A DNA stretch of 63,819 bases, filler included, from Pelomyxa schiedti (Eukaryota > Protista > Evosea), in assembly GCA_020536535.1 (NCBI GenBank). It is 7 parts of 7 records of this genome, joined end to end, with 100 filler letters (N's around TTAATTAATTAA, not from the genome) between each part and the next. Parts side by side here need not be neighbours in the genome. Positions count along the whole stretch, not along the records: positions 11,228 to 34,998 come from JAHLWZ010000372.1; 6 more parts are not named here. One strand, given 5' to 3'. Positions 11,228 through 26,082 of the stretch are shown here, piece by piece; position 1 is the first letter of the stretch, and each line of letters opens with the position of its first letter. Made by a program: the position numbers and the translations under genes. The notes beneath the pieces are model-generated. The model had not been told where the DNA came from, searched no databases, and saw only the letters and a list, made by a program, of their open reading frames with translations.

Positions 11228-11285
11228 CCGGTTAGAGCACCAGAGTCTAAAGCTGGAAACCTGGGTTCAAGTCCCAGCTGTAGGA
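11228..11285 (+). tRNA. 3' part of the CUA-anticodon tRNA, second copy (truncated by contig start)
   Basis: Identical to 22976-23033, followed by a T-run. Confidence 0.75.
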
Positions 11286-11400
11286 TATTTTTTTTTGTTA
11301 GTGCTGCTAAGGCGTCGTGATTCTAGGAATAAAAAAAAAGATAACGTGGGTAAAAAACGTGTGCATAATAAATTGTTTTGAAACAACCTGGTCAATGCCC

Positions 11401-13228
11401 TCATAGGCTCATAAGAGCCATGCGAGCACGCTGGACCATTTGAAGGCCAAGGATGCAGTCATCAGTGATGAACCCGTCGTGTCCGTGGACAATTCCGTGC
11501 ATAAAATCGGTCTCGGCATCAACTGTCCATGTGAATACTGGCATGAGGTGCCTGTGGGACAGTTTCACATCTGAAGAAAAAATTTCCGCGTTAGACACAT
11601 GTCACAAAACATTAAAAAAAAAAAACCCTACAATCGACTGTCGTTGTTGTGAAAGACTGACTGAATCCACCCACACCTGTCAAAAATTGGTCACTTAATG
11701 TCGAGGAAAAAGCACTAGCAGCCAATCTCAGGCTATAAACCTAGATCTATGAGTTGCTCAAAGTAGGCGTCGTCATAGACTGCCGGCTGTGACTGCAGAA
11801 GCTGTTTCGATGTGGATGGCAACACTTTGTCTATGGCAATGGCCTATTTTTTTTTGTAAGTCGAGGGCCGTAAGAGTCGGCTCAGATCTGACGTGATGGG
11901 AAGAAAGTTTACCTCGCTGAGAGTCCAGCACGACGCGATTACGTTTGCTTGCATTTCGTACTTGTTGACCAAGTCTGCAATCTCTTGTTCGATGCCTTCA
12001 ACTTTGAGATCCATGATGATAAATGTGTTGTAGTTCTGTGTTACGATCAACCATAAAAAAAAGGTATGGTCTCCAAACCACTCCAAACCAAACTCTACAC
12101 AATTCAAAAAGATAAAACGAGAAAAGTGGAAGATACTAAGAATGTACCCACCTGGGCAAGTTGGAGTGCCTCTTCGAACCGGGGTACGGGTGTGCCAGCG
12201 AATTCAGGTCCGAACCACGATCCAGCATCACATGAATCAATATCTTTTTACATGTTAGTCTGGGTACCTATCATTTGATTCAAAACTCTTAATAGAAGTA
12301 TTTATTAAGTTCTACTAGTACTTACAGCCATAGTAGGGATTTGCACTAATGGCGCCAGTGCAATTTGTTGTTCGGTCAAGTGTTGTGTCATGCATTAAAA
12401 TGACAACGCCGTCCTATGTTGAAGTAAGCACAGAAGGAAAGGCGCATGCCCAACTGATGTCAGTTGCAAATCGGTCTCAAATCCATCAGCCAAGTTGTCA
12501 AGAGCTGCCTGGAAAGAAACCATGGTATTCTCAGGATACATGCTGGGTAAGCCCCTGTGTCCTATCAGTCGTTAGGGAACTAATAATAGTCAGAAAGTGG
12601 CTGACGAACCAATTACGAGAGGTGCAGTTCTGTTAGTGTCTGGAGTAAGTAGACCTATGGCATGAAGACAATGCCCACTAAGAACTGAAACAAACGTCTT
12701 GCCATTCCACTCCCACTGGTCTGCAGGCTTCATATACTCGAAATAAGTTTCTCTCTCTCTTGGAGGGGGGAAAAAGTGCATACACTATTGGAGGAACAAG
12801 TTTCCACATCGGCGTTGGCATAGCTTCCAGTGCAATGTTGCTGAACGTGTAAGCACTTATTATCAAGTGCTGTTGTAAGTTGTTTCTAAGAAGTTATTAG
12901 GCACAACGATAAACCAAAACGAGTAAAAGACAAGAAAATTACAGTATTTGAGTTGTAGGTCCACTTTTGATTGGACTTTCCAGTCCCGCACTCATAGAGT
13001 TGAGCATTAGCGCCCTCGAATGTCTTATAACTCTCCACATCGAGGCACATCCCATTGGATATCAGAGTAAAGTCTATCGACCAAGAAGGTTAAACAAAAA
13101 CGAGTGAGTCAGGTGAGACTGAATAAAGACATACGCCCATCAACAGCATTCAGGGACCACTGTTGTTGAGTGTCATCAGAGACACAAGGCTTAACAGCCA
13201 CGTTGCCGCCGTAAGGGGTACCCCAAAC
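11401..13228 (-). CDS. Ricin-B-lectin + glycerophosphodiester phosphodiesterase, copy B (5'-partial)
   Basis: Same exons as 23168-25017. Confidence 0.8.
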
Positions 13229-21800: not shown

Positions 21801-22452
21801 GAGACACCACCACCACCACCACCACATAAAAGTCACATTCCCAAAACAATCAGAATGGCATGTGACACAAGTTAAATACCGGTTGGGGCTTGCCGTGGTC
21901 TCTGGACCCAGGCACCACCGACGTGAGCACGTCAAAGGCCGCCGCGCCGGTCGTGTTCACGACGCCCTTGATCGACGTCGCGGCGGTGGTCACCAGGCCC
22001 CCCGCCGCGCCCACGCCCTTGGCGAACACCGCGCCCACCATGCCCCCTCGCGGCTTCCCCGCCCCCGTCCCGATGCTCGTGGTGCTGGCGTCCAGGGGGT
22101 TCGAGGGGTCCGCCGCCGCCGGGGCCGCGAGGCCCGAGGCCCCTGCCGAGGAGGAGGTGGAGGTGGAGGTGGAGGACGAGGACGAGGTGGACGAGGTGGT
22201 GAGGGCGCTGAGGAGGTCGGGGTTGATGGACTCGGAGGAGGTGGGGGAGGAGAAGGCGTTGCCGTCGATGCTGCCGCGGCGCTTGCGGCCGGGCAGGCGC
22301 AGGACCTTCTCGGCGCGGGCGTAGGCGGCGGCTGCGGCCTGCGCTGTGTTGGCTCCCACGCGGCCGAGCATCGACGACTCGACATCCTCGTCGCTGTCGT
22401 ATTCGTCCTCAGAGTCGGACAACGCCCACAGTGAGGTGCCGCGGTCCATCAT
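18885..22452 (-). CDS. EXO70: Exocyst complex component Exo70 (EXOC7), many introns
   Basis: Motifs MPADGTVHETTSN|TMNYL, IFMLNNVHYIL and C-terminal KYRKYQPEDLTAVLQRLFEG. Confidence 0.88.
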
Positions 22453-22865
22453 CAATAGCTTTTACGGGAAATGCTGCAAAAAACGGTTTTTATTCTTTAT
22501 CTGAACCTGATTATTATTATCTTATGATTCCGGGTGTGTTCCCTTCTGGAAACACAGAGCTGTTCTTTTTCTCGTTGCTCGCCGACGGAGAGATTTTGGT
22601 TGGGGTGGGGCAGAAGAATATTGTGTGGGAGAAAGAAATCCGTCCTGTGGTTGATGTTGGTAAAATTCTGGTTCCAGCTTGTGATAGCAACTTGTGGCCG
22701 GGCCATCATTAATATCTCTTGTCTACACGCAGCACCAAATCGAAACTTCCCTTTTTCAAACCAGTTGTTTTGTGTTGGAATTTTAAAAAATGGAAGACGA
22801 GGAGTACAGCACCTTAACCCGGTCTTTTGTACCCACAATGCAGTTTGGCAAAAAATTCGTTTTAG

Positions 22866-22889: not shown

Positions 22890-22895
22890 ATTTCG

Positions 22896-23033
22896 CCTAC
22901 AGTAGCTCAGTGAACGCTAGTCCCAACCCAATCCAACCGACACCTCTTCGAGGCCACTGATTGAAACGGGATGTTCCGGTTAGAGCACCAGAGTCTAAAG
23001 CTGGAAACCTGGGTTCAAGTCCCAGCTGTAGGA
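22896..23033 (+). tRNA. tRNA with CUA (amber) anticodon, Tyr-like identity, and a 65-nt D-loop insertion (22912-22976)
   Basis: Acceptor CCTACAG/CTGTAGG plus A73; D stem GCTC/GAGC; anticodon arm CCAGA-GTCTAAA-GCTGG; T arm CTGGG-TTCAAGT-CCCAG; T5 terminator. Removing the insert gives a 73-nt cloverleaf. Confidence 0.8.
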
Positions 23034-23167
23034 TATTTTTGCATTGATTTTTTGTTGGTGTAGCCACGGCGTCCTGTATCTCTGAAAGAAGGGTAACGAA
23101 AAAAGATAACGTAGGGAAAAACCGTGGTGCTCATAATAAATTGTTTTGAAACAACCTGGCAATGCCC

Positions 23168-25017
23168 TCATAGGCTCATAAGAGCCATGCGAGCACGCTG
23201 GACCATTTGAAGGCCAAGGATGCAGTCATCAGTAATGAACCCGTCGTGTCCGTGGACAATTCCGTGCATAAAATCGGTCTCTGCATCAACTGTCCATGTG
23301 AATACTGGCATGAGGTGCCTGTGGGACAGTTTCACATCTGAAGAAAAAAATCCGTGTTAGTCACATGTCAAAAAACATTTGAAAAAAAAAAAAAAACCCT
23401 ACAATCGACTGTCGTTGTTGTGAAAGACTGGCTGAATCCACCCACACCTGTCAAAAATTGGTCACTTAATATCGAGAAAAAGTACTAGCAGCCAATTTCA
23501 GCCTACAAACCTAAATCTATGAGTTGCTCAAAGTAGGCGTCGTCATAAACCGCCGGCTGTGACTGTAGAAGCTGTTTCGATGTGGATGGCAACACTTTGT
23601 CTATGGCGATGGCCTATTTTTTGTAAATCGAAGGCCGTAAGCTCTGACGTAACGGGAAGAAAGTTTACCTCGCTGAGAGTCCAGCACGACGCAATTACGT
23701 TTGCTTGCATTTCGTACTTGTTGACCAAATCTGCAATCTCTTGTTCAATGCCTTCAACTTTGAGATCCATGATGATAAACGTGTTGTAGTTCTGTGTTAC
23801 GATCAACCATAAAAAAGGTATGGTCTCCAAACCAAAGACAACGCAATTCAAAAAGATAAAACGAGAAAAGTGGGAGATACTAAGGATGTACCCACCTTGG
23901 CAAGTTGGAGTGCCTCTTCAAACCGGGGTACGGGTGTGCCAGCGAATTCAGGTCCGAACCACGATCCAGCATCACATGAATCAATATCTTTTTACATGTT
24001 AGTCTGGGTACTTATCATTAGATTCAAAACTTTTAATAGAAGTATTTATTAAGTTCTACTAGTACTTACAGCCATAGTAGGGATTTGCACTAATGGCGCC
24101 AGTGCAATTTGTTGTTCGGTCAAGTGTTGTGTCATGCATTAAAATGACAACGCCGTCCTATGTTGAAGTAAGCACAGAAGGAAAGGCGCATGCCCAACTG
24201 ATGTCAGTTGCAAATCGGTCTCAAATCCATCAGCCAAGTTATCAAGAGCTGCCTGAAAAGAAACCATGGTATTCTCAGGATACATGCTGGGTAAGCCCCT
24301 GTGTCCTATCAGTCGTTAGGGAACTAATACTAGTAAGGAAGTGGCTGACGAACCAATTACGAGAGGTGCAGTTCTGTTAGTGTCTGGAGTAAGTAGACCT
24401 ATGGCATGAAGACAGTGCCCACTAAGAACTGAAACAAACGTCTTGCCATTCCACTCCCACTGGTCTGCAGGCTTCATAAAATAGAAGTAAGATTCTCTCT
24501 CCCTTGGAGGGGGGAAAAAGTGCATACACTATTGGAGGAACAAGTTTCCACATCGGCGTTGGCATAGCTTCCAGTGCAATGCTGCTGAACGTGTAAGCAC
24601 TTATTATCAAGTGCTGTTGTAAGTTGTTTCTAAGAAGTGATTAGGCACAACGATAAACCAAAACGAGCAAAAGACAAGAAAATTACAGTATTTGAGTTGT
24701 AGGTCCACTTTTGATTGGACTTTCCAGTCCCGCACTCATAGAGTTGAGCATTAGCCCCCTCGAATGTCTTATAACTCTCCACATCGAGGCACATCCCATT
24801 GGATATCAGAGTAAAGTCTATCGACCAGGAAGGTTAAACAAAAACGAGTGTGTCAGGTGAGACTGAATAAAGACATACGCCCATCAACAGCATTCAGGGA
24901 CCACTGTTGTTGAGTGTCATCAGAGACACAAGGCTTAACAGCCACGTTGCCGCCGTAAGGGGTACCCCAAACAAGCGCAACAAACGAAACCAACAACACA
25001 CAACGAGAAAGCCGCAT
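23168..25017 (-). CDS. Secreted ricin-B-lectin + glycerophosphodiester phosphodiesterase (GDPD), copy A
   Basis: Signal peptide MRLSRCVLLVSFVALVWG. QxW repeats (QQW, NQKW, DQW; GMCLDV). GDPD motifs G|HRGLPSMYPENTMVSF, DGFETDLQLT, LMHDTTLDRTT, VFTWTVD, DGFITD. Confidence 0.88.
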
Positions 25018-25061
25018 TCACAATATCAAAAGTCCGGTTATGAGAAATATAAAAGGGGCAA

Positions 25062-25109
25062 CCACCCAAAAGCAGCGCGCTTCGATCGAAGCGCGCTGCT
25101 TTTGGGTGG
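25062..25109. repeat. 48-bp perfect palindrome
   Basis: CCACCCAAAAGCAGCGCGCTTCGA|TCGAAGCGCGCTGCTTTTGGGTGG. Confidence 0.95.
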
Positions 25110-25503: not shown

Positions 25504-25851
25504 GACAACAATAATTTTATATTATATACACACCCCCCAGCCCGCCATAAGACAGAGAGAGACCCGCACAGGGGCCCACATGGTTTTTTCTTTGATTCTC
25601 TCACACACTTTTTTGCTTTGTTACACACGAGCTTCGATCGAAGCGCGCTGCTTTTGGGTGGGGCAGGATTCTTTTCGTAAGCAGAAGTGGTCTTAGAGAC
25701 ATACGAGAGGAACTAGTAAAGTAATAAATTAAAAAAACCCACAGTGCCATANNNNNNNNNNNNNNNNNNNNNNNNNNNNNNNNNNNNNNNNNNNNNNNNN
25801 NNNNNNNNNNNNNNNNNNNNNNNNNNNNNNNNNNNNNNNNNNNNNNNNNNN

Positions 25852-25901
25852 CCCAACCGTCAGATCTGGAGTCTGACGCACTACCATTATGCTACGTCCC
25901 C
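25852..25901 (-). tRNA. tRNA-Trp(CCA), second copy cut by a gap (within a duplicate of ~25079-25375)
   Basis: Identical to the 5' portion of 25225-25296. Confidence 0.75.
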
Positions 25902-26082
25902 TTGTTGTTGCCAAGCCAATGGGAAAAACACATCCTCTATAGACAACTTTCTTTTTTTTCCTCTTCTTTTTTCTTTTCCTTCTTTAAAAAACTGTATGGC
26001 GGCGTTGTGAAATTAATGTGCTTCCAAAGGGAAAGCTGTGCTCATTTTTTATTGGTGTTGGGTTTTAGTGGTACTTGTACTT

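What the first reader, a model, noticed from the sequence alone, without database searches (positions are those of the whole stretch)
22896..23033. Nuclear tRNA with an amber (CUA) anticodon and Tyr-type identity elements: candidate natural UAG-decoding system
Seen: a perfect 7-bp acceptor stem (C1:G72, discriminator A73), a 4-bp D stem, a perfect T arm with intact B box, an anticodon loop G-T-CTA-A-A (CTA at 22995-22997, with canonical U33 and purine 37), and a T5 terminator. The 58 nt visible in the second copy (11228-11285) are identical, while the 3' flanks diverge immediately. Oddities: A31-G39 mismatch, G32, 4-nt variable loop. Established: C1:G72 with A73 is the eukaryotic/archaeal TyrRS identity set, and CUA reads UAG. 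It lacks tRNA-Pyl hallmarks (G73, 6-bp anticodon stem, 3-nt variable loop). Inference: this may be a dedicated amber read-through or recoding tRNA in an organism whose exons here otherwise fit the standard code.
Basis: partly seen in the sequence, partly recalled or inferred. Interest (0 to 1): 0.92.

Follow-up and report, generated by a model that had tools for sequence, protein, structure and literature searches.

The report
Expressed tRNA-shaped RNA with extra arm
An anaerobic amoeba makes a small family of tRNA-shaped RNAs that carry a large extra hairpin and, in half of the copies, a stop-codon-matching anticodon, although the organism uses that codon as an ordinary stop; the RNA is real and conserved, but probably does something other than routine decoding.

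Summary
The feature is real. The genome matches Pelomyxa schiedti. The gene is one of six copies of a tRNA-shaped RNA of about 140 nt with a 65-nt hairpin inserted in the D loop. Three copies have anticodon CUA and three have CCA. All keep C1:G72, A73, an A31.G39 mismatch and G32, and two acceptor pairs change in compensation. Each intact copy has an external CCCAYAA (DUSE) element 63 nt before G-1, as this genome's U6 and tRNA-Sec genes do and ordinary tRNAs do not. Single-cell RNA contigs cover the gene with the hairpin retained, CUA intact, a 5' end at G-1/C1 and a non-genomic C after A73. TAG is an ordinary stop here, eRF1 is canonical, PylRS was not found, and normal tRNA-Tyr and tRNA-Trp exist. 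The CCA sisters make a simple 'Tyr amber suppressor' unlikely. Best reading: a CCA-ended tRNA scaffold carrying a protein-binding arm and acting outside general decoding (0.45). A dedicated, Sec-like stop read-through tRNA is not excluded (about 0.2, or 0.3 with a spliced version). No precedent or relative was found. Charging is untested.

The parts
22832..22838 (+). External promoter element CCCACAA (DUSE type), 63 nt before G-1
   Evidence: Same element at 63 nt in all 4 intact copies, at 62-63 nt in 6 of 6 U6 genes and at 64 nt before tRNA-Sec; background 0.00025 per base
22895..22895 (+). G-1, probable transcription start
   Evidence: G in all 4 intact copies after a pyrimidine; template-switch adapter abuts 22895 in one RNA contig. 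The extra G could also be non-templated.
22896..22911 (+). tRNA 5' part: acceptor strand, U8-A9, D stem, A14-G15-U16
22912..22976 (+). 65-nt hairpin arm in the D loop (four helices, conserved internal loop), retained in RNA
   Evidence: All 18 pairs kept in 4 copies, with changes in loops or pair-preserving; RNA contigs run through it with no skipping joint
22977..23033 (+). tRNA 3' part: G18-G19, D stem, anticodon arm with A31.G39, G32 and CTA at 22995-22997, T arm (loop 23014-23020), acceptor strand, A73
   Evidence: a non-genomic C follows A73 in one RNA contig
23036..23040 (+). Pol III terminator (T5)
   Evidence: T runs follow all copies
11228..11296 (+). Second CUA copy (3' part only, cut by the contig edge) and its T run
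11228..13228 (+). First unit of a 2-kb segmental duplication; the second unit is 22976-24972 (94% identical)

Best explanation
A dedicated RNA polymerase III transcript built on a tRNA scaffold and working outside general decoding. Shown: the gene uses the U6/tRNA-Sec type external promoter, is transcribed from about G-1 to A73, keeps the 65-nt arm, and is under selection for both the cloverleaf and the arm. Probable (one non-genomic C in one contig): it receives CCA. Inferred: it folds into an L shape with the arm projecting from positions 16-17, where the insert breaks the internal A box and so explains the external promoter. The tRNA body supplies stability, 3' maturation and perhaps an amino acid (TyrRS is the first candidate from C1:G72/A73; HisRS is possible if G-1 is kept). 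The arm's conserved internal loop binds a protein partner that holds the RNA in a particle or hands the amino acid to a non-ribosomal reaction. The distorted anticodon loop (A31.G39, G32) and the bulky arm keep it a poor ribosomal substrate, so position 35 can be U or C without harm.
For: Six copies with conservation confined to the RNA. Compensatory changes at pairs 3:70 and 4:69, and 152 of 152 cells paired. DUSE placed as in U6 and tRNA-Sec. RNA contigs over the gene with none over the 650 nt upstream, arm retained, both subfamilies present. Two different anticodons on one acceptor end. TAG is a true stop. Ordinary tRNA-Tyr and tRNA-Trp genes exist. Precedent for matured tRNAs with no effect on the proteome: nematode nev-tRNAs (PMC4300185).
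Against: Both observed anticodons are ones that can read stop codons (CUA reads UAG; CCA is near-cognate to UGA), and U33, C34, A36 and A37 are conserved, which looks like selection on the loop. The promoter type is shared with the one known stop-reading tRNA of this genome. No partner protein was identified. Only two subfamilies in one genome are available, so covariation rests on few events. A spliced 73-nt form could be missed by these libraries.
Confidence: 0.45

Rival explanations
1. A dedicated, context-dependent stop read-through tRNA analogous to tRNA-Sec. The unspliced RNA is charged (most likely with Tyr) and delivered to selected UAG codons (CCA copies to UGA) by a special factor that binds the arm, while eRF1 terminates elsewhere.
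For: CUA anticodon in three genes and in RNA; same promoter class as tRNA-Sec; intact T arm and G18-G19; two divergent eRF1 paralogues besides the canonical one; 4-bp anticodon stems can alter decoding (PMC13092985).
Against: No target mRNA found. No TAG excess in kinase matches (TAG-only 7, TAA-only 11, TGA-only 7 of 115) or after long ORFs. The published UGA-reading tRNA-Trp is unpaired at the top of the stem, not at 31:39. A CCA copy is fully cognate to UGG and would mistranslate Trp codons. One TyrRS and one TrpRS locus were seen, and no PylRS.
Confidence: 0.2
2. The insert is a non-canonical D-loop intron. It is removed to give ordinary-sized CUA and CCA tRNAs, and the RNA contigs show only the precursor.
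For: Removing 22912-22976 gives a canonical D loop; the base of the arm resembles a relaxed helix-bulge-helix; D-loop introns exist in some algae and archaea (PMC3978253); small modified tRNAs are poorly captured by these libraries.
Against: Cutting at the GAAC/GTTC helix by BHB rules leaves a 12-13 nt loop without G18. The only register that keeps GG needs three G.U pairs in a 4-bp helix. No skipping joint in either RNA run, although introns of the neighbouring gene were seen. The insert is as conserved as the tRNA body, unlike a typical intron.
Confidence: 0.1
3. It is the amoeba's vault RNA or Y-like RNA: the arm binds the genome's TROVE-domain protein (TEP1 or Ro60).
For: The genome has at least six major vault protein loci and one TROVE locus, yet no Rfam-type vault RNA; bacterial Y RNAs mimic tRNA and can receive CCA (PMC4201824); a protist vault RNA is known in trypanosomes (PMC12547018).
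Against: No match to the Vault or Y models at E up to 10; no GNCGAA or GUCCGA Ro-binding motif; a complete anticodon arm would be unnecessary.
Confidence: 0.12
4. A selectively neutral or selfish tRNA-derived element (a young SINE master or transcribed pseudogene family).
For: One copy is 5'-deleted, copies spread by segmental duplication, and no relative was found elsewhere.
Against: Only six copies; each has its own upstream promoter at a fixed distance, which retrotransposed copies would not carry; compensatory acceptor changes; conservation stops at the RNA ends.
Confidence: 0.1

Closest known systems
Eukaryotic tRNA-Sec
   Same: Stop-codon anticodon, non-standard structure, external promoter; in this genome the same CCCAYAA element at about the same distance.
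   Different: 7/5 acceptor-T fold, 4-bp D stem, short variable loop, CUA or CCA instead of UCA, and a 65-nt D-loop arm. A separate true tRNA-Sec gene exists.
Nematode nev-tRNAs (PMC3333845, PMC4300185)
   Same: Lineage-restricted, expressed, CCA-matured tRNAs whose identity elements disagree with the anticodon, with no detected effect on the proteome.
   Different: nev-tRNAs have an ordinary long variable arm and Leu identity; here the extra domain is in the D loop, the promoter is external and one anticodon is amber.
Natural UAG-decoding tRNAs of code-variant protists, and tRNA-Pyl
   Same: CUA anticodon.
   Different: Those organisms have in-frame TAG or PylRS; here TAG is a terminator, PylRS was not found and the Pyl structure is absent.
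BHB-type D-loop intron tRNAs (Cyanidioschyzon merolae, archaea; PMC3978253)
   Same: Insert in the D loop with a helix at its base.
   Different: No BHB register gives a canonical product, and the insert is retained in the RNA contigs seen.
Y RNAs/YrlA and vault RNAs
   Same: Pol III-type small RNAs with tRNA-like parts plus a separate protein-binding stem; partner protein families are present in the genome.
   Different: No model match, no Ro-binding motif, and a full cloverleaf in normal order.

Membership tests
Eukaryotic tRNA-Tyr identity | C1:G72 and A73 | tested here: met
   All copies; identity set from PMC9976931
Eukaryotic tRNA-Tyr identity | G34 and U35 | tested here: not met
   C34 in all; U35 only in the CUA copies
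Eukaryotic tRNA-Tyr identity | Charging with tyrosine | not testable with these tools
   Needs an aminoacylation assay
Eukaryotic tRNA-Trp identity (CCA copies) | A73, CCA anticodon and G1:C72 | tested here: not met
   A73 and CCA present but the first pair is C1:G72
UAG codon reassignment | In-frame TAG in conserved proteins; TAG not used as a terminator | tested here: not met
   TAG ends 3 of 37 actin-type and 1 ribosomal P-type C-termini; no TAG excess
UAG codon reassignment | Altered eRF1 | tested here: inconclusive
   One canonical eRF1 (TASNIKS, YxCxxxF) plus two divergent paralogues
Programmed read-through of selected UAG codons | Specific target mRNAs | not testable with these tools
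   No gene models or related genome available
tRNA-Pyl system | PylRS gene and Pyl-type tRNA fold | tested here: not met
   No PylS match (draft genome); A73, standard stems
tRNA-Sec | UCA anticodon, 9/4 fold, long variable arm, RF01852 match | tested here: not met
   The only match is a different locus
DUSE-driven Pol III small RNA genes | CCCAYAA about 60 nt upstream and a T-run terminator | tested here: met
   DUSE described in PMC7919456
BHB intron-containing tRNA | BHB motif whose cuts restore a canonical tRNA | tested here: not met
BHB intron-containing tRNA | Spliced product detected | tested here: inconclusive
   None in the contigs, but contigs cannot show absence
tRNA-derived SINE | Many dispersed, decayed copies without their own upstream promoter | tested here: not met
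   Six copies by three methods (counts are lower bounds)
Y RNA / YrlA | GUCCGA or GNCGAA Ro-binding motif; Rfam match | tested here: not met
Vault RNA | RF00006 match | tested here: not met
   (the model is built on animal sequences)
Vault RNA | Binding to TEP1 or vault particles | not testable with these tools
   Needs co-purification
Retroelement primer tRNA | Repeated primer-binding sites complementary to the 3' end | tested here: not met
   One hit, matching neither subfamily exactly

The most novel reading that the evidence does not exclude
A second Sec-like recoding system in a eukaryote with a standard code: externally promoted tRNAs whose D-loop arm recruits a dedicated factor, or selects the mRNA, so that an amino acid is inserted at chosen UAG (and perhaps UGA) codons only.
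Probability: 0.2. Interest if true: 0.95.

Novelty: new variant of a known kind. Interest (0 to 1): 0.77.

Why it matters
An expressed, selected tRNA-shaped RNA with a 65-nt arm in the D loop, a U6-type promoter and an amber anticodon, in an organism that uses UAG as a stop, has no precedent in the literature I could search. Standard tRNA finders miss or mislabel it, so similar genes may be hidden in other protist genomes. If it acts outside translation, it is a new tRNA-scaffold RNA and a candidate for the missing vault or Ro partner RNA of amoebae. If it decodes, it is a new form of programmed stop recoding. Either way it shows that the D loop can carry a large domain in nature, which bears on tRNA engineering and nonsense suppression.

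Tried and rejected
Relatives: an anticodon-arm/T-arm pattern gave only chance hits in metagenomes (4) and prokaryote genomes (2), and none in viral contigs; a phage BLAST gave only a weak tRNA-Lys match. No other amoebozoan genome was reachable, so this blank says little. The four in-frame TAGs in an eRF1-like locus lie in a GT-AG intron. Run X5 holds only the neighbouring mRNA. Box C/D, Sm and Ro motifs are absent. An H/ACA reading fails because the candidate H box is not kept in the CCA copies. A telomerase-template reading fails because the C-rich stretch differs between subfamilies. No primer-binding-site family. No ordinary-scaffold CUA tRNA. The single-sequence fold is not better than shuffles (z -0.9); support for the structure comes from the alignment. 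One synthetase search failed on a frame slip and was not repeated.

Full report
Observation. The acceptor stem 22896-22902 pairs with 23026-23032 (C1:G72), A73 is at 23033, and the D stem halves are separated by a 65-nt insert (22912-22976). The anticodon loop has CTA at 22995-22997 with A31.G39 and G32, the T arm is perfect, and T5 lies at 23036-23040. ARAGORN misses the gene in the window and Rfam sees only its 3' half. The claim that the second copy's 3' flank diverges is wrong: both copies lie in a 2-kb duplication of 94% identity.

Organism. The assembly has 52.37 Mb in 5337 contigs. This matches the published Pelomyxa schiedti assembly, 52.4 Mb in 5337 scaffolds (PMC8887013). The identification is an inference from that match and from the intron-rich genes. 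The contig is nuclear and eukaryotic, not from an endosymbiont and not human-like.

Family. BLAST, a pattern and a covariance model all find the same six copies (counts are lower bounds). Three have CTA (two on this contig, one on C202). Three have CCA (two on C19, one of them 5'-deleted, and one on C2236). All share the insert, A31.G39, G32 and A73; the four intact copies share C1:G72. Intact genes are 86-96% identical while flanks are mostly 40-50% alike. Acceptor pairs 3:70 and 4:69 change on both sides between the subfamilies, two further pairs change on one side, and no pair is broken. RNAalifold finds the same 38-pair structure unaided. With four related sequences this is few independent events, and the single-sequence fold is unremarkable. 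The 4-nt variable loop is limited to this contig's copies. Origin is unresolved: the insert-free core matches this genome's tRNA-Trp at 34-40 of 60 positions, tRNA-Lys at 36-37, tRNA-Arg at 34-35 and tRNA-Tyr at 29-33. Among ordinary tRNAs the model ranks tRNA-Lys(CTT) first. Ordinary tRNA-Tyr(GTA) with a canonical intron (at least five copies) and tRNA-Trp exist, and no other CUA tRNA was found.

Promoter. A CCCAYAA element begins 63 nt before G-1 in all four intact copies and 62-63 nt before the first G in six of six U6 genes. Its background rate is 0.00025 per base, and ordinary tRNAs on hand lack it at that place. This is the DUSE element of dictyostelid small-RNA genes (PMC7919456). I predicted that the genome's tRNA-Sec would carry it too, and it does, 64 nt upstream. 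The insert interrupts the internal A box, which would explain the need for an outside promoter (inference).

Expression. Contigs of two single-cell RNA runs of one sample cover the gene, with none over 22205-22852, while the neighbouring gene appears spliced, so the signal is RNA rather than DNA. Contigs run from within the insert through to A73, and no joint skips the insert. CTA is unchanged, and letters of the CCA copies are also present. In one contig a template-switch adapter abuts 22895. In another a single non-genomic C follows A73 before the tagmentation adapter, as CCA addition would give. Caveats: these are contigs rather than reads, each end rests on one contig, depth is not a measure of level, the extra G may be non-templated, and a short modified spliced form could be missed. 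The runs are probably those of PMC10579272, which added poly(A) in vitro; that would explain the capture of a Pol III RNA.

Is the insert an intron? Applying bulge-helix-bulge rules to the GAAC/GTTC helix leaves a 12-13 nt D loop without G18. The one register that keeps GG in all copies needs three G.U pairs in four. Non-canonical nuclear tRNA introns so far depend on such motifs (PMC3978253). Together with the RNA contigs and the conservation of the insert, this favours a retained arm.

Is UAG read as sense? Not generally. TAG ends 3 of 37 actin-type C-termini (32 TAA, 2 TGA) and one ribosomal P-type C-terminus. Of 115 kinase matches, 53 (8153 codons) have no stop, and those with a single stop type split TAG 7, TAA 11, TGA 7, as expected from introns (counted by hand). 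After frames of 120 or more codons, the median run to the next stop is 17.5 codons for TAG, 16.5 for TAA and 18 for TGA. A canonical eRF1 exists, with two divergent paralogues. PylRS was not found, and one TyrRS and one TrpRS locus were seen (lower bounds). The neighbouring gene has no in-frame TAG and ends in TGA. These tests cannot exclude read-through at a few chosen genes.

Identity. C1:G72 with A73 is the eukaryotic Tyr acceptor set, which also includes G34 and U35; Trp needs G1:C72; His uses G-1 with A73 (PMC9976931). The CUA copies are thus partial Tyr substrates. The CCA copies fit neither Tyr nor Trp well, and a retained G-1 would add a His signal. A charged, ribosome-competent CCA copy would mistranslate UGG. 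That both subfamilies are tolerated suggests that they are kept from general decoding. From my own knowledge rather than a test here, position 32 is almost always a pyrimidine and 31:39 is normally paired in decoding tRNAs. The published UGA-reading tRNA-Trp with a 4-bp stem is unpaired at the top, not the bottom (PMC13092985).

Mechanism. Best reading (0.45): a tRNA scaffold, transcribed from a U6-type promoter, matured at its 3' end and carrying a protein-binding arm, that acts in a particle or as an amino-acid donor off the ribosome. Transcription, arm retention and structural selection are shown, CCA addition is probable, and charging and the partner are inferred. Rivals are Sec-like programmed stop read-through (0.2), a vault or Y-type role with the genome's TROVE protein (0.12; partner genes present but no model or motif match), a spliced suppressor (0.1) and a neutral element (0.1).

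Novelty. No relative was found in the metagenome, viral, prokaryote or phage collections. No paper describing such an RNA turned up, within the limits of those collections. The nearest precedents are tRNA-Sec, nematode nev-tRNAs (PMC4300185) and tRNA-mimicking Y RNAs (PMC4201824); it fails membership of each. I score it a new variant of a known kind, interest 0.77.

Noticed in passing
G000:C1146:9167-9316: The genome has a tRNA-Sec gene with the DUSE element 64 nt upstream, so this anaerobic amoeba probably uses selenocysteine.
   Followed up: partly
L024 (C1215), L026 (C424), L028 (C383): Three eRF1-like loci: canonical TASNIKS, a TASCIKS variant and a divergent TAMSIRT form that seems joined to an upstream region. 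C804 is Pelota.
   Followed up: partly
L030:1500-3100 (C1042): TyrRS has a long Ser/Thr/Ala/Pro-rich stretch just before its KMSAS motif and what looks like a C-terminal tRNA-binding domain; whether the stretch is exonic was not checked.
   Followed up: no
G000:C807:26546-27809; C810, C516, C352, C518, C850, C93: One TROVE-domain locus (Ro60 or TEP1 not resolved) and at least six major vault protein loci, with no Rfam-type vault RNA.
   Followed up: partly
G000:C791:296790-297172, C1563:3668-3931, C4328:173-227, C729/C2370, C35/C1884/C2380, C216:44341: Other tRNA-like sequences with intact A or B boxes but irregular anticodon arms, several in identical multiple copies.
   Followed up: no
window 25060-25109 and 25628-25977: A near-perfect palindrome of about 50 nt beside a divergent tRNA-Trp/tRNA-Glu pair, with a second partial copy of the block across an assembly gap.
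   Followed up: no
genome-wide: 37 actin-type C-termini, strongly favouring TAA (32) over TAG (3) and TGA (2).
   Followed up: yes
window 22895-22900 and L012:1894-1899: Counting from G-1, the first six bases of the CUA copies equal those of this genome's tRNA-Lys(TTT), and those of the CCA copies match the start inferred for tRNA-Lys(CTT) from its 3' strand; this may be chance or a one-base register shift from a tRNA-Lys ancestor.
   Followed up: partly
G000:C894, C171: Two Thg1-family loci, so G-1 handling enzymes are present.
   Followed up: no
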